NCBI RefSeq assembly: GCF_006345805.1
Contig: NC_043014.1
Coordinates: 27,342,001 to 27,406,000 of the forward strand
From: Octopus sinensis
Lineage: Eukaryota
DNA length: 64,000 bases
Reading direction: 5' to 3'
Of this stretch, positions 16,342 through 61,053 are shown one piece after another. How positions within the stretch are numbered: position 1 is the first letter of the stretch; every line of letters begins with the position of its first letter. The notes beneath the pieces were generated by a model. It worked only from the letters and a program-made list of their open reading frames with translations, did no database searches and was not told the DNA's origin. The translations under genes and the position numbers were made by a program.

Positions 16342-16578
16342 AAAAGAATGCCATCAGTAGAAAGAGAAATGTCGGAAGCACTAAAAAATTCAATGTAACT
16401 GGATCGAAGAACGGCTATATCAATAAAGAATCTATTGATTATAAAGATAGTGATGTTGATAGTAACATCAACGGATATATCAATGTTGAAGGTGACTCGT
16501 TTCATAGTGTTAAACAAGTGCAATCAGCAGTCCAACGAAAAGAACCTTTTATTGATGGCCAAATCATCCACAGATCAA
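16342..16578 (+). CDS. Host gene exon A (237 nt, phase 1-1): KNAISRKR...IDGQIIHRS
   Basis: Upstream CTAAT branch-like motif, CTCTCTTGCAG acceptor, A|GTAAGA donor, length 79x3, open phase-1 frame, N-glycosylation sequon NVT. Confidence 0.75.
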
Positions 16579-16699
16579 GTAAGATTTGATTTCCTTTAAT
16601 CTCCCTAAATTATTGTTTTCTTTTGTAAGTTATTGTTTTGCTTTTCGCTTTGACTTTTCTGATCATTTTTATTCTGCTGCAGCAAAACATATTCCTTCT

Positions 16700-16866
16700 T
16701 GCAGTGTTTGTTGTTGTTGTTGTTGTTGTTGTAGTTGTTGCTGTTGTTGTAGTTGTAGTTGTAGTAGTAGTAGTAGTTGTAGTAGTAGTAGTAGTAGTAG
16801 TTGTTGTTGTTGTTGTTGTTGTTGTTGTTGTTGTTGTTGTTGTTGTTGCTGTTGTTGTTGTTGTTG
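16700..16866. repeat. Compound (TTG)n/(TAG)n microsatellite, tail of the adjacent LINE
   Basis: Direct reading. Confidence 0.95.
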
Positions 16867-17250
16867 ACGCTTTTGCTCTGGCAGATGTTATACCGACTCT
16901 ACGCCAAAAGAGAGAGCCATATCAAATGGCCAAAGATGCTTTAGATCATTCCTTCTTCAACTTTCTAACACCTTCCTTAGTATCCTTGCTTAACAATGCT
17001 GTTTTCTGCAATAGCCCCGTTCGAATGGTAATTCCTAGCTTTTCAAGCCATGCATCCAACCTTTCACTAATTATTCGCAGTGCGTCAATTACAATCTGTA
17101 CCACTTCTACGTACCTGATTCTCCTTAGTTTCCTGATTTCCCTCTCCAGCTTCTGATATTTCTCCACCTTCCCACTTTCCTTCTCATTCACCCTGTAGTC
17201 CCAAAGTGGGGTAACATCCACAATAATTACTTTGTTCTTCTTTTCTACTA
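16867..17250 (-). mobile_element. R4/Dong-type LINE 3' end (restriction-like endonuclease C-terminus)
   Basis: DVTPLWDYRVNEKESGKVEKYQKLEREIRKL..VEVVQIVIDAL..LEKLGI..LLQKTALL, followed by an (AAC)n tail. Confidence 0.85.
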
Positions 17251-17282
17251 CAATTATTATTATTAGTATTAGTATTATTAAG

Positions 17283-17460
17283 TCGGCGAGCTGACAGACT
17301 CGCTAGCACGCTGGGCGAAAAGCTTAGCGGTATTTCGTCCTTCGCTATGTTTTAAATTCAAATTCTGCCGAGGCCGGCTTTGCCTTTCGTCTTTTTGGAG
17401 GTCGACAGAATAAGCACCAATCAAATACTGGGGTAGATGTAACGCTTCAAGGTTCTCGCA
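17283..17460 (+). mobile_element. SINE family A
   Basis: GGCGAGCTGACAGA..TAGCACGCTGGGCGAAAAGCTTAGCGG..TTCAAATTC..TTTGCCTTTC. Confidence 0.85.
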
Positions 17461-17644
17461 TCGGAGTAACCAGAGAACATCGAAGAATTTCAAGCCTTGT
17501 GCTTATGATAGAAAGGATTATTATTGTTATTATTATTATTGTTGTTGTTGTTATTGTTGGTGGTGGTGATGGTGGTGGCATTATCATTATTATTATTATT
17601 ATTATTATTATTATTATTATTATTATTATTATTATTATTATTAG

Positions 17645-18243
17645 GTGAGACTATTTCAGAACCAAGGTACATGAAATCCTCCTCTTAACTGATGGGCTCT
17701 GCTTTGATGTTTGAGGTAGATCCTTACTGGTTGTTTTACTAGGATTAACAAGTAGTCCAACATTATGTGCAGCTAATTCTAGACTATAATAAAGTAGTTG
17801 GACGGAGTTTGGTATTGTGTCAGAGAGCAGAGCTAAATCATCAGTGTAGCAAACATCAGTTAGTTTTAGAGCTGGATGTCCGATCGAGCTTCTTTTTGCG
17901 GGTGTGAAACCGAGGTTGTTTAGGTTGTTGAGTTATGTTCTGAGGACATAATCCAAAGTGATCGCGAACAGAAAAGGTGCCAGTGTATCCCCCTGGAGTA
18001 CTCCGGCTCTGAAGTCAAAGAAACTTGTATTTCCATCAAGGAACCTTGCCATTGATTCGGTGTTATTATAGAGCATCATAATTGCAGCTGTTGTTTCCTC
18101 AGGGACACCTAGTGGTATATTTTTCCCATCTTGCCATGATGGATGGAGTCAAAAGCCTTTGAGAAATGAACAAATAGTAATACTTCCTCAAGATTTTTGG
18201 TTTTCACTCCATCCAGTAGTCGAAAACTGTACCTTACCAAAAG
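17645..18243 (-). mobile_element. RTE-clade LINE RT fragment (inverted relative to the next fragment)
   Basis: Minus-strand FVHFSKAFDSIH, GVLQGDTLAPFLF, YTDDLALL, MYLGS. Confidence 0.9.
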
Positions 18244-18254
18244 ACTAGAATCCT

Positions 18255-57726: not shown

Positions 57727-57761
57727 GTTTCTGACGAAGAGCTCCGCTCGAAACGTAAAAA
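57727..57761 (+). ncRNA. Minimal type-I hammerhead, canonical core, short stem I
   Basis: TTT-CTGACGA-A-GAGC(TCC)GCTC-GAAA-CG-T-A-AAA. Confidence 0.6.
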
Positions 57762-58469
57762 TCTCCTTCTTCCCAACTTTCCTGAGCGTCCAATAATACT
57801 ATATTTGTTCCACGTCCTCGCGTTGTTGTTGTTTTCTCTTTTGTTTTTCATGTTTGGATTAACTATATATATATATATAATATATATATATATATATATA
57901 TATATATATATATATATATATATAATATATATAAAAGGAAATGAAGAAAATGCTGGCAAAATAATTTAAGTAATTTAAGTAATTTATTAGGTGAAAGTTC
58001 TTTTTACCGGTTGCGCATTTGTTATGCTTATCAAAAGATTAGAGTTCCTTCTGATAGATTTTTTCCTCTTCCTCTATTATTTTGCCAGCATTTTCTTCAT
58101 TCCTTTTTATATATCACAACTCGTGTTCCACATCTCCTTTTTTAAATATATATATATATATATATATATATATATATATATATATATATATATATATATA
58201 TATATATACTGATGCATATATATTGCCATTGATATTATTATATATAGCTATTGATATATTTATATACATATATATATATATATATGTATACATAAACATA
58301 AACATATATATGTATATATATATATATAATATATATTATATAATATATGTGTGTGTGTATATAAATATATATATGTATGTATGCATGTATTTATGTATGT
58401 ATGTAGTATGTATGTATGTATGTATGTAATGTATGTATGTATGTATGTATGTATGTATGTATTGATATA

Positions 58470-59180
58470 TCTATATAAGCAATTCTCTGGATATGATCAG
58501 AAAGATAGTGTTCGAGTACACAGAGGTGCTAGAAAGAAATTCAATAACATTATACGTAATGATTGGTACCTGCCCTAGATATAGAAACAAAGACTGGAAT
58601 AGGATACAAAGAACTTGTGACAAACCAAACAGAGCGAACATGTATAATACCGACAAATATCAAGGAGTGATGTTTGTAGACACCACACCCCATGGAGAAA
58701 TAGCCTGTAGATTTAGAAAATCTCTGAAGGAGACCAAACTCAACATTAAGATTGTTGAAAAGCCAGGGAACACCGTCAGATCACAACTGTGTACGACGTA
58801 CCCCTTTGAGAATACCATATGCACCAATGATAGTTGCATGGTATGTAGGATTATACCTGGCATTAACTTTAGAACTAAAAATGTTGTTTACAGCATAAGA
58901 TGCATAGAAGGTGCTTGTAAAGACATAAACATGACATACATAGGAGAGACATCTAGGAGCATTGCGGAACGACTAAATGAACATGTGAGACAATATGACG
59001 ACAAAAAACAGTCCTCCATACTCTACCAACATGCCAAGGACCAACCTGGAGGCAACCTGGGTCAACTTGACATACGCATCTTATCTAAGCACCCAAAGGA
59101 CATAACACTCAGACAAATACAGGAGTACGTCCTCATAAATGAAACTTCCTCAATACTAAATAGGAAATATACATAGTAGA
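58470..59180 (+). mobile_element. Penelope-like (probably Neptune-type) endonuclease region, 227-aa open frame
   Basis: MFVDTTPHGEI, KIVEKPG, C..C finger, NVVYSIRC..TYIGETSRSIAERLNEH, ILNRK. Confidence 0.85.
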
Positions 59181-59714
59181 TATCATACCCCCATACCCAG
59201 TTTTCAAGGGTAGAGTAGAATAGTTAGTGGGCTGTTATGTAGACAGATGTATGTGTGTGTGAGTGTATGTATATATGTATATATATATATTATATATATA
59301 TATAAACAGTACTTGGAGAAGAAGAAACGAAACGAAACGAAACGAATCGAATCGACGCGAGGGCGCTCAGTCATACAATAGTGTAATAAATAAAATATAT
59401 GCATACATACAAATATGTACGTACCTACATCTACATGTATATATAAATATATATACGTGAGTACAGGACACCACAAACAGACGTAGAACTCAACGAGAAA
59501 CGAAAACGTAAAAACAAGCATGGAACAGAATTTTTTTAAAACGAAAAACAGAGTACAAGACAAACTACACTAGGAAAAATCCCCTTCATCAGCTGTCCCT
59601 AGTTCAACTCCAGCGTGTTTCGAAGGTGAGGACAGAACATGACTCGTCGAACTAGCCCTTCCTGCGAAAGAATTAAATAAACCACTCTATCCTAAAATGG
59701 ACTGGATTTTTCTG

Positions 59715-60255
59715 GCATCTCCTCATTTCTTTCTTTTCATGATATTAATTGGTTGAAGGAGAGGTTTTTCTAGCTGCTCGTCCATAATACCCAAGCTTAT
59801 GCAGATATGTAACGTTCTTGGACTAACTTTTAGCTGTTTTGCAATGTCAGAAGCCTTCGAACGGGGTTTGTTTTCCACAATTCTCTTCAAACAGCGAAGC
59901 TTCCTTTCCGAGGGCCCAGGTTGGCCAAGATGAGAATCTGTTGATTCTTTTCCTTGGCTTTTGAATTGCAGTATAATTCTATTAACAGCCGCAAGATGAA
60001 TTTGAAGACTTTCGGCAATTTTTCGCCGGCTAATACCAGCCTCAGATTGCCCAACAATACGACCTGTTTGAAAATCTGACAGTTCTGCTGAATTTTTTGA
60101 GCGTGGCATGGTTACTTTTCGCAAATGTTTAATATAATGGTACCTGGAATGAAAAGAGAATAATTACATTGTAAATTCTAAACGGCTGAAAACATATTAA
60201 GACGCTTAGATCAGAAATTTTCAAAATTAAAGGTGTCTGTTTACTTCCTGCATAT
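59715..60255 (-). mobile_element. Tc1-like transposase, 5' fragment (HTH)
   Basis: MPRSK..ELSDFQTGRIVG..GISRRKIAE..VNRII..PGPSERKLRCLKRIV..KASDIA..VSPRT. Confidence 0.85.
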
Positions 60256-60274
60256 GTGTGTATATATATATATA

Positions 60275-60670
60275 CTAGCAGTATAACCCAGTGTTGCACG
60301 GGCTTGTTTTCTTTTCGACCCTTTAGAATTGGAATCTTTGAAAAGTAAAAATTTTGCATTATGTAGCTTGTTATTCTCTTTAAGTGAACATTTTTCTGGT
60401 TGAAATACACCGAAAAATGGCGACACGGCAGTAAAAAAATCGTAAAATATTGGGATTTTCATAGAAGAAAAGCACATTTTTTTATGTAAATAATTTTTGG
60501 TGTTAACATGGTCCGATTTGAATTTTTTCTTCTACGGAAGGAAGAGCAAGCCTTCTTCTATCATACTGTTAATTTTGGTCAACTTGTGCCGCAGAGTCTC
60601 GGAGGAGATAGTGTTAGTTGAAGGCTACCATACCTGCCATACACAGGCAACTTCAGCTTTATATATATAT
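60275..60670 (-). mobile_element. Non-autonomous Helitron-like element
   Basis: Minus-strand end ...CTGGGTTATACTGCTAG; colinear with 38260-38646. Confidence 0.8.
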
Positions 60671-60951
60671 ATATTATATATATAATATATATATATATTA
60701 TATATATATATATATATATATATATATTATATATATATATATATATATATATATATACACATATATATATATATATATATATATATATATATATATATAT
60801 ATGCGTGCGTGTGAGCATGTGTCTGCCTGAACGTATGAAGACTTGGTAGACTTCTAATGCATAATTCTTTAGAGCTAAGTCGATGCTAATATACTTTATT
60901 ACGAGATAATTTGCCTAATCGATCACTTCTCTTGCTTGTTTTTTTTTCCAG

Positions 60952-61053
60952 TGGTATGCGGTGACAAAACTTGTCATAAAGACGCTGAATGCTACAGAAG
61001 AAAATGCCGATGCCGCCGAGGACTGACTGGTGACGGCGTTAACTCGTGCTCCA
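60952..61053 (+). CDS. Host gene exon F (102 nt, phase 1-1): EGF-like domain VCGDKTCHKDAECYRRKCRCRRGLTGDGVNSCS
   Basis: Long pyrimidine tract plus CAG acceptor, A|GTAAGT donor, six Cys in EGF spacing with CxC..GxxGDG..C. Confidence 0.9.

What the first reader, a model, noticed from the sequence alone, without database searches (positions are those of the whole stretch)
16342..61053. Hidden host gene: six symmetric phase-1 exons give pro-region, RSKR furin site, short spacer and EGF module
Seen: exons of 237, 21, 72, 18, 63 and 102 nt, all multiples of 3 with good splice signals, join in an open 171-codon frame: ..IDGQIIHRSKR/FMLPLGTGSDRHNLFNTFHEKLDNIRQHREEMRDAGLMNLGYPSAHSQGWKEPNQRVVCGDKTCHKDAECYRRKCRCRRGLTGDGVNSCS. 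The R-X-K-R motif forms only across the A-B junction, which spans 19.8 kb. Most of these exons are invisible in the ORF track. Inference: a secreted, proteolytically matured EGF-domain protein that I cannot assign to a known family, possibly lineage-specific.
Basis: partly seen in the sequence, partly recalled or inferred. Interest (0 to 1): 0.7.

Follow-up and report, generated by a model that had tools for sequence, protein, structure and literature searches.

The report
Unannotated octopus EGF-domain gene fragment
Six small coding pieces spread over 45 kb of transposon-rich octopus DNA very probably belong to one real gene for an extracellular protein with an EGF module. This is an ordinary kind of gene, and the proposed furin cleavage and secretion remain unproven.

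Summary
Six plus-strand segments sit exactly where described: 16342-16578, 36380-36400, 41905-41976, 46586-46603, 52309-52371 and 60952-61053. Each has an AG acceptor after a pyrimidine tract and a GT donor. All lengths are multiples of 3, all are phase 1-1, and together they give 170 open codons.

The chain is more than chance:
- Phase-1-1 exon candidates of this quality number 7 on the plus strand, against 1.2 expected in simulations and 1 on the minus strand.
- The only EGF-type six-cysteine pattern in all six frames is exon F, bounded exactly by phase-1 splice sites.
- The two micro-exons are the only such candidates in the 44 kb between exons A and F.

The DNA is from Octopus: a Helitron helicase fragment is 85-87% identical to O. 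bimaculoides proteins.

No homologue of the non-EGF part was found. The window holds no signal peptide, start codon or confirmed stop codon. RSKR depends wholly on the 21-nt micro-exon B, and such a motif arises by chance in 19% of shuffles; a second one (RCRR) lies inside the EGF module.

Verdict: a probable real gene fragment and a new member of a known kind (modular extracellular EGF protein). Secretion and furin maturation are inference. No transcript or cross-species data were available. Interest is low to moderate.

The parts
16342..16578 (+). Exon A, 237 nt, phase 1-1. It encodes 78 aa rich in N/K/S/D (KNAISRKRNVGSTKKFNVTG...IDGQIIHRS), with one NVT sequon, an RKR, and an internal NGYIN(K/V)E repeat.
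   Evidence: Acceptor ctcttgcag| scores 4.7 bits (rank 67/3679) and donor |gtaaga 7.0 bits. The open frame (16323-16586) almost coincides with the splice sites. The exon is unique in the window and not inside a repeat. It has no homologue in 1.84e9 representatives. Purine at codon position 1 is 76%. AF2 pLDDT is 47, so no fold is predicted. There is an alternative in-phase donor at 16491 (8.3 bits).
36380..36400 (+). Exon B, a 21-nt micro-exon (..K)RFMLPL(G..). It completes the R-S-K-R motif.
   Evidence: Acceptor tcttttcag| scores 4.5 bits and donor |gtaagt 8.7 bits (rank 42/3960). GC is 0.52 against 0.33 in the flanks. It is one of only two micro-exon candidates in 44 kb. All three frames are open, so there is no coding evidence of its own.
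41905..41976 (+). Exon C, 72 nt, phase 1-1: TGSDRHNLFNTFHEKLDNIRQHR.
   Evidence: Acceptor scores 8.8 bits (rank 7/3679) and donor |gtaact 7.5 bits. The exon is unique sequence.
46586..46603 (+). Exon D, an 18-nt micro-exon: (E)EMRDA(G).
   Evidence: Acceptor scores 9.3 bits (rank 6/3679) and donor |gtatga 5.9 bits. GC is 0.50 against 0.33 in the flanks.
52309..52371 (+). Exon E, 63 nt, phase 1-1: LMNLGYPSAHSQGWKEPNQR.
   Evidence: The acceptor is weak on the crude PWM (0.8 bits, rank 248), while the donor |gtaaat scores 6.9 bits. GC is 0.48 against 0.30 in the flanks. This is the least certain of the longer exons.
60952..61053 (+). Exon F, 102 nt, phase 1-1: one complete six-cysteine EGF module, VCGDKTCHKDAECYRRKCRCRRGLTGDGVNSCS.
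   Evidence: It is the only EGF pattern in six frames, against 0/200 simulations with the CxCxxGxxG core. Pfam EGF_3 gives E 0.0044 and 17.7 bits, below the gathering score of 28.5. The AF2 model has pLDDT 75.6 with the central beta-hairpin. Foldseek's best, non-significant matches are mostly EGF modules. Acceptor scores 8.0 bits (rank 13) and donor |gtaagt 7.3 bits. GC is 0.51 against 0.21-0.25 in the flanks.
62282..62373 (+). Speculative terminal exon: in phase with exon F it would add N+SFLFFKHPKRQDPSVIRIDYCTMSLEKLI and then TAA.
   Evidence: The acceptor is strong, ccctctctag| at 7.8 bits, among the top 16 on the strand. There is no other support. Low confidence.

Best explanation
This is the internal part of a real, plus-strand, protein-coding Octopus gene with long introns (4.6-19.8 kb) full of transposons and microsatellites. 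It encodes an extracellular modular protein.

Layout of the encoded fragment:
- A 78-aa unstructured segment rich in N/K/S/D.
- A cysteine-free linker of about 56 aa, built from four small symmetric exons.
- A compact six-cysteine EGF module on its own phase-1-1 exon.

The gene starts upstream of the window, or at an undetected first exon. It either continues beyond the window or ends in a short terminal exon near 62.3 kb.

Shown here: the exon-intron anatomy, its excess over chance, the EGF module, and the lack of detectable relatives for the rest.

Inferred from established knowledge: EGF modules and all-phase-1 exon sets are hallmarks of secreted or extracellular proteins assembled by exon shuffling, so the product probably enters the secretory pathway.

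Most likely mechanism, at roughly 30% confidence for this step: when micro-exon B is included, a furin or PC-type convertase cuts after R-S-K-R in the late secretory pathway. This removes the disordered N-terminal segment and leaves a fragment beginning FMLPLG that carries the EGF module as its binding surface. Skipping B, or using the 16491 donor, would give an uncleavable isoform.
For: - Coordinates, splice motifs, phases and the open frame are reproduced exactly.
- Good phase-1-1 exon candidates are in excess on the + strand: 7 against 1.2 simulated and 1 on the - strand; 3 against 0.2 at the strict threshold.
- B and D are the only micro-exon candidates between exons A and F; 0.35 are expected, and 2 or more occur in 6.5% of simulations.
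- Three of the 13 best acceptors among 3679 AGs belong to exons C, D and F.
- Exons B, D, E and F are GC-rich islands (0.48-0.52) in AT-rich flanks (0.21-0.34), and no exon overlaps a repeat.
- The EGF pattern is unique in six frames and absent from 200 simulated windows. It has a Pfam EGF_3 match at E 0.0044 and an AF2 hairpin model at pLDDT 75.6.
- Codon position 1 is purine-rich, 66% against 53+-7% (P about 0.04).
- The window is Octopus DNA.
Against: - No transcript evidence and no cross-species conservation could be obtained.
- No homologue of exon A was found in 1.84e9 representatives, and none of the joined peptide in 5.8e9 proteins, metagenome contigs or the PDB.
- No start codon or signal-peptide exon lies in the window, and there is no hydrophobic segment.
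- Exon A has intron-like GC (0.34) and no predicted fold.
- Exon E has a weak acceptor.
- The Pfam EGF_3 score is below the gathering cut-off, and the Foldseek matches are not significant.
- The RSKR motif is not statistically unusual: 19% of shuffles contain one, and a second motif lies inside the EGF.
- P1' Phe is not a preferred furin residue (my own knowledge of furin specificity, not tested here).
- All exons are symmetric, so any one can be false or skipped without breaking the frame.
Confidence: 0.55

Rival explanations
1. The gene is real, but the model is incomplete or partly wrong. The segments are an internal linker plus the first EGF of a much larger multi-EGF matrix or receptor protein that continues outside the window. 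One or both micro-exons, or exon E, are false or are alternative cassettes. RSKR is then incidental and is not a maturation site.
For: - The window has no start, signal peptide or confirmed stop.
- The EGF belongs to the GxxGDGxxC type, which (from general knowledge) usually occurs in tandem arrays.
- All exons are symmetric, so the frame cannot validate any one of them.
- An alternative in-phase donor lies at 16491.
- The RSKR motif is expected by chance in 19% of shuffles.
- Exon E has a weak acceptor.
Against: - B and D are the only micro-exon candidates in 44 kb, and both have one very strong splice site.
- No further EGF pattern or other cysteine-rich exon exists anywhere in the 64 kb.
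- A strong acceptor at 62282 would allow a short terminal exon and hence a small protein.
Confidence: 0.3
2. There is no gene. The chain is a chance assembly of exon-like segments in AT-rich, repeat-rich non-coding DNA, picked out because symmetric segments always join in frame.
For: - No homologues, no transcript data, and no start or stop.
- Exon A looks compositionally like intron and is also open on the opposite strand.
- Short exons are open in several frames.
- Many top-scoring acceptors in the window derive from SINEs or other transposons, so the splice PWM is noisy.
Against: - The excess of phase-1-1 candidates over the simulations and the minus strand.
- An exact EGF module bounded by phase-1 sites, never seen in 200 simulated windows.
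- GC-rich exon islands.
Confidence: 0.12
3. Exon F, perhaps with neighbouring exons, is a gene fragment captured or carried by a mobile element such as the nearby Helitron. It would be a dead copy of a gene located elsewhere.
For: A Helitron PIF1 helicase fragment lies 2.4 kb downstream at 63497-63946. The window is saturated with mobile elements.
Against: - The exons are intact and in phase over 45 kb, far more than a captured fragment would span.
- No second copy or repeat signature overlaps any exon.
Confidence: 0.03

Closest known systems
Generic metazoan EGF-module extracellular proteins (Pfam EGF_3-like / GxxGDGxxC type, as in nidogen, uromodulin, stabilin and thrombospondin type-2 repeats; compact spacing like tenascin/teneurin EGFs)
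   Same: Six cysteines with a C-x-C core followed by G-x-x-G-D-G...C. The module is encoded by one exon with phase-1 boundaries on both sides. The best Pfam match is EGF_3, and the best structural neighbours are EGF modules.
   Different: Only one module is visible. The C3-C4 loop is very short (4 residues), and Leu replaces the usual aromatic residue before GDG. The Pfam score is below the gathering threshold. The N-terminal 136 aa match nothing.
Proprotein-convertase-processed extracellular precursors in which an N-terminal propeptide and R-x-K/R-R site precede EGF modules (e.g. the fibrillin N-terminus or cubilin; recalled from the literature, not tested here)
   Same: The order is the same: an N-terminal segment, a multibasic R-x-K-R, a short unique region, and then EGF.
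   Different: There is no sequence similarity. The spacer here has no cysteines or recognisable domain. No signal peptide was found. Here the site is created by a 21-nt micro-exon junction.
Vitamin-K-dependent coagulation factor layout (propeptide, R-x-K/R-R, Gla domain, EGF on phase-1-1 exons, with a micro-exon between Gla and EGF)
   Same: The overall order and the exon logic match: a multibasic site, then a unit of about 50 aa, then small exons, then a phase-1-1 EGF exon.
   Different: The 56-aa spacer has no Gla-domain features: no Cys pair, no Glu cluster and no Pfam hit. No protease domain is visible. This is analogy only.
EGF-receptor ligands (EGF/TGF-alpha/Spitz/L-EGF type)
   Same: A small precursor with a pro-region and a single EGF would resemble them if the short terminal exon is real.
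   Different: The cysteine spacing is 4-5-4-1-11, not the ligand-type 7-4/5-10/13-1-8. The EGF is on one exon rather than split. No transmembrane segment is seen.
Micro-exon genes (MEGs) of schistosomes
   Same: Symmetric micro-exons (18 and 21 nt) in a presumably secreted, lineage-restricted protein.
   Different: Only 2 of 6 exons are micro-exons and they encode 39 of 513 nt, whereas MEGs are built mostly from micro-exons. The phylum is different and there is no homology.

Membership tests
EGF-like module | Six cysteines in the order and spacing C-x(2-8)-C-x(3-8)-C-x(3-12)-C-x-C-x(5-16)-C, with a G-x-x-G after the C-x-C | tested here: met
   CGDKTCHKDAECYRRKCRCRRGLTGDGVNSC at 60957-61049. 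It is the only match in six frames, against 0/200 simulated windows with the CxCxxGxxG core.
EGF-like module | Profile match at the curated threshold (Pfam EGF families) | tested here: inconclusive
   EGF_3 gives E 0.0044 and 17.7 bits, below the gathering score of 28.5. No other EGF profile was reported.
EGF-like module | EGF fold (central two-stranded beta-hairpin, disulfide-knotted) | tested here: inconclusive
   The single-sequence AF2 model has pLDDT 75.6 with a hairpin at residues 11-14/17-20. Foldseek against the PDB gives a best E of 3.2; most listed neighbours are EGF modules but none is significant.
EGF-like module | Module carried on a single symmetric phase-1-1 exon (exon-shuffling signature) | tested here: met
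   Exon F (60952-61053) begins 5 nt before Cys1 and ends 4 nt after Cys6, with phase 1 at both ends.
Furin/proprotein-convertase substrate | R-x-K/R-R motif in an accessible region | tested here: inconclusive
   RSKR is present at residues 77-80 of the joined peptide, but only if micro-exon B is spliced to the 16578 donor. The motif is expected in 19% of shuffles, and a second one (RCRR) lies inside the EGF.
Furin/proprotein-convertase substrate | Entry into the secretory pathway (signal peptide) | tested here: not met
   No ATG + hydrophobic + phase-1-donor exon lies in 1-16341. There is no hydrophobic stretch in the 170 aa; the maximum KD15 is 0.09. The true first exon may lie outside the window.
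Furin/proprotein-convertase substrate | Demonstrated cleavage | not testable with these tools
   This needs protein chemistry.
EGF-receptor ligand family | Ligand-type cysteine spacing, an EGF split by an intron, and a following transmembrane segment | tested here: not met
   The spacing is 4-5-4-1-11 on a single exon. No hydrophobic segment was found.
Vitamin-K-dependent Gla-EGF proteins | Gla domain between the propeptide cleavage site and the first EGF | tested here: not met
   There is no Pfam Gla match even at E<=10. The spacer has no cysteine and few Glu residues.
Transposon-encoded protein | Exons lie in repeated DNA or match transposon proteins | tested here: not met
   No exon overlaps an intra-window repeat or has a second copy. 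Exon A has no significant relatives.

The most novel reading that the evidence does not exclude
An octopod-restricted small secreted pro-protein (pro-segment, linker, single EGF, short tail ending at the 62282 exon) whose convertase site exists only when a 21-nt micro-exon is spliced in. Alternative splicing would then switch the protein between a cleavable and an uncleavable form. It could be a new cephalopod signalling, pheromone-like or glandular secretory factor.
Probability: 0.1. Interest if true: 0.5.

Novelty: new member of a known kind. Interest (0 to 1): 0.2.

Why it matters
If confirmed, this adds one more gene to the octopus catalogue that ORF-based or early annotation misses: tiny symmetric exons separated by 5-20 kb transposon-filled introns. 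It is also a candidate lineage-restricted extracellular EGF protein. The only point of wider interest would be a convertase site created by inclusion of a micro-exon, meaning splice-controlled proteolytic maturation, and that is unproven here. Otherwise it is an ordinary modular extracellular gene.

Tried and rejected
- Word-indexed search of the joined 170-aa peptide against 5.8e9 proteins: no hit.
- Exhaustive phmmer of exon A against 1.84e9 representatives: a single low-complexity chance match to a bacterial repeat protein.
- Back-translated scan of JGI metagenome contigs: nothing.
- PDB sequence search: nothing.
- Exact look-up of an intronic transposon ORF, to recover the source contig and its annotation: not on record.
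- Rfam and tRNA scans for intron-hosted RNAs: nothing.
- Literature searches by topic and by peptide strings: nothing relevant.
- Search for a signal-peptide first exon and for further in-phase exons upstream and downstream: only weak candidates (12934-13023; 62282-62373).
- tblastn for duplicated exons in the window: none.
- A full three-frame Pfam scan of the + strand was prepared but not run. It is costly and insensitive for short exons, and the EGF regex had already covered the relevant module.
- Identities considered and rejected: EGFR ligand, Gla-EGF protein, schistosome-type MEG and transposon protein (see the membership tests).

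
Full report
**What the window is**

The 64-kb window is AT-rich (36% G+C) and crowded with microsatellites (53 TRF rows) and transposon remnants. The remnants include:
- a LINE-type endonuclease at 7065-7574 (+);
- a reverse transcriptase at 49805-50467 (-);
- a GIY-YIG (Penelope-type) ORF at 58493-59176 (+);
- a Helitron PIF1 helicase fragment at 63497-63946 (+).

The helicase fragment's two best relatives among 5.8e9 proteins are Octopus bimaculoides UniProt entries at 85-87% identity, and the next hit drops to 54%. 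The DNA is therefore from Octopus, either O. bimaculoides or a close relative. The same result shows that the only octopod proteome visible to the protein tools is the UniProt O. bimaculoides set. This limits what a 'no hit' can mean.

**Checking the observation**

After I corrected my own off-by-one errors, the six segments are exactly as claimed: A 16342-16578 (237 nt), B 36380-36400 (21), C 41905-41976 (72), D 46586-46603 (18), E 52309-52371 (63) and F 60952-61053 (102).

- Each follows a pyrimidine-rich tract ending in AG and precedes GT (gtaaga, gtaagt, gtaact, gtatga, gtaaat, gtaagt).
- Every length is a multiple of three, and every exon starts with two bases and ends with one base of a split codon (phase 1-1).
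- The joined 513 nt read as 170 complete codons without a stop.
- R-S-K-R arises only across the A/B junction (AGA TCA A|AG CGT).
- With bacterial-style ORF calling, exon A's frame appears only as a 23-aa ORF and exon F as a 48-aa ORF. The remark that the exons are invisible in an ORF track is therefore correct.

**Is it more than chance?**

I scored all AG and GT sites with a generic metazoan splice PWM, not trained on octopus.

- Exons C, D and F have acceptors ranked 7th, 6th and 13th of 3679 AGs on the strand.
- Exons A and B rank 67th and 73rd, and exon E is weak at 248th.
- All donors lie in the top 170 of 3960.

In 16001-61400 I counted distinct acceptors that give an open phase-1-1 exon with a donor of at least 5.9 bits, at acceptor thresholds of 0.8/4.4/8 bits:

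| Sequence | Count at 0.8 / 4.4 / 8 bits |
|---|---|
| + strand | 12 / 7 / 3 |
| - strand | 3 / 1 / 0 |
| Mean of 150 third-order Markov simulations | 5.1 / 1.2 / 0.2 |

At the lowest threshold 2% of simulations reached the real count, and none did at the two higher thresholds.

For micro-exons (12-30 nt), B and D are the only candidates in the 44 kb between A and F. The minus strand has none, 0.35 are expected, and two or more occur in 6.5% of simulations.

No exon overlaps an intra-window repeat, although SINE copies lie 150-300 nt away from A and B. Exons B, D, E and F are G+C islands (0.48-0.52) in flanks of 0.21-0.34. Codon periodicity is weak but in the right direction: purine at position 1 is 66% against 53+-7% for random open segments (P about 0.04).

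The thresholds were taken from the claimed exons, so these numbers are somewhat optimistic. Taken together they still argue for a real plus-strand gene.

**The EGF exon**

A six-cysteine EGF regular expression matches once in all six frames, at exon F. The loose pattern turns up in 19% of simulated windows, but with the C-x-C-x-x-G-x-x-G core it appears in none of 200.

- Pfam reports only EGF_3, at E 0.0044 and 17.7 bits, below the gathering score of 28.5.
- A single-sequence AlphaFold model of the 33 residues has pLDDT 75.6 with the central hairpin.
- Foldseek finds nothing significant (best E 3.2), but most listed neighbours are EGF modules: AMA4 EGF1, teneurin-3, the fibrillin-1 N-terminus, reelin, integrin I-EGF3 and factor Xa.
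- The exon begins 5 nt before Cys1 and ends 4 nt after Cys6, in phase 1 at both ends. This is the classical signature of a shuffled extracellular module (established knowledge).

I regard this exon as the best-supported part.

**The rest of the peptide**

Exon A encodes 78 residues rich in N, K, S and D. It has one NVT sequon, an RKR and an internal NGYIN(K/V)E repeat.

- It has no relatives. The only phmmer hit in 1.84e9 representatives is a low-complexity match to a bacterial repeat protein.
- AlphaFold predicts no fold (pLDDT 47).
- Its G+C (0.34) is no higher than that of the surrounding intron.

The joined peptide finds nothing in the word-indexed 5.8e9 protein set, in JGI metagenome contigs, in PDB sequences or in the literature by peptide string. 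The 170 residues contain no hydrophobic segment. The window contains no plausible signal-peptide first exon and no duplicated exons.

Upstream and downstream I found only weak in-phase candidates:
- 12934-13023 (90 nt);
- a possible terminal exon at 62282, behind a strong acceptor, which would add 30 residues and then a stop.

**The furin site**

RSKR is real in the spliced product, but the evidence that it is functional is thin, for five reasons:
- It depends entirely on the 21-nt exon B.
- Because all exons are symmetric, the frame cannot vouch for B. Joining A to C directly gives HRSR-T.
- A second in-phase donor inside exon A, at 16491, scores as well as the one used (8.3 against 7.0 bits) and would delete the site.
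- In this basic-rich peptide (15 R, 15 K) at least one R-x-[KR]-R appears in 19% of shuffles, and a second one (RCRR) sits inside the EGF, where cleavage is implausible.
- From general knowledge of furin specificity, Phe at P1' is not favoured.

**Interpretation**

The most likely reading (about 0.55) is an internal fragment of a genuine Octopus gene for an extracellular, EGF-bearing protein. Its N-terminal part is disordered and evolves fast or is lineage-restricted. Secretion is inferred from the module type and the all-phase-1 architecture. Convertase cleavage after RSKR is a reasonable but unproven mechanism, at about 30%.

The rivals are:
- The same gene with an incomplete or partly wrong model, belonging to a larger multi-EGF protein in which RSKR is incidental (about 0.3).
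- No gene at all, only a chance assembly (about 0.12).
- A transposon-carried gene fragment (about 0.03).

**Comparison with known families**

The module is EGF_3/GxxGDGxxC-like with compact tenascin-like spacing.
- It is not an EGF-receptor-ligand EGF: the spacing is wrong and the module is on a single exon.
- The spacer is not a Gla domain.
- The gene is not a schistosome-type micro-exon gene.

The order 'propeptide, R-x-K-R, short unique region, EGF' recalls the fibrillin N-terminus, cubilin or the vitamin-K-dependent factors. That is analogy from memory, not homology.

**Verdict**

This is a new member of a known kind and of modest interest (0.2).

Noticed in passing
window 5100-12500: A G+C-rich (42-47%) cluster of plus-strand transposon ORFs. 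It includes a LINE-type endonuclease (Exo_endo_phos, 7065-7574) and, at 11937-12446, an ORF whose HDNARPH...D motif looks like a mariner-type transposase C-terminus (from memory). Pfam gave no match for the latter.
   Followed up: partly
window 58493-59176 (+): An intact 227-aa ORF with a GIY-YIG nuclease domain (Penelope-like element) sits in the intron between exons E and F. No identical product is on record.
   Followed up: partly
window 63497-63946 (+): A Helitron-type PIF1 helicase fragment, 85-87% identical to two Octopus bimaculoides UniProt proteins (A0A0L8GPG7, A0A0L8I603). It is the basis for assigning the window to Octopus.
   Followed up: yes
window 47734-48189 and 49805-50819 (-): Minus-strand reverse-transcriptase remnants (RVT_1 at 49805-50467) in the intron between exons D and E. 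Their antisense strand produces several spurious plus-strand exon candidates.
   Followed up: partly
window 16708-16866: A (TTG)53 microsatellite starts 130 nt into the intron after exon A and produces long artificial poly-Val/poly-Cys ORFs.
   Followed up: no
window 16044-16171, 21225-21325, 28076-28152, 47075-47154, 61388-61508; also 36088-36233, 36722-37089, 52009-52093: Two dispersed short repeat families (SINE-like), 77-93% identical between copies. One family carries a built-in '...tttcatcctttcag|GG' sequence that scores among the best acceptor sites in the window (36142, 52045), so it is a source of false splice predictions.
   Followed up: partly
window 42115-42276 and 42732-42893: A 162-bp segment duplicated at 98.8% identity, 617 bp apart, just downstream of exon C and including microsatellite tracts.
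   Followed up: no
window 59723-60124 (-): A 133-aa ORF resembling the N-terminal helix-turn-helix part of a Tc1/mariner transposase. This is from memory only and was not scanned.
   Followed up: no
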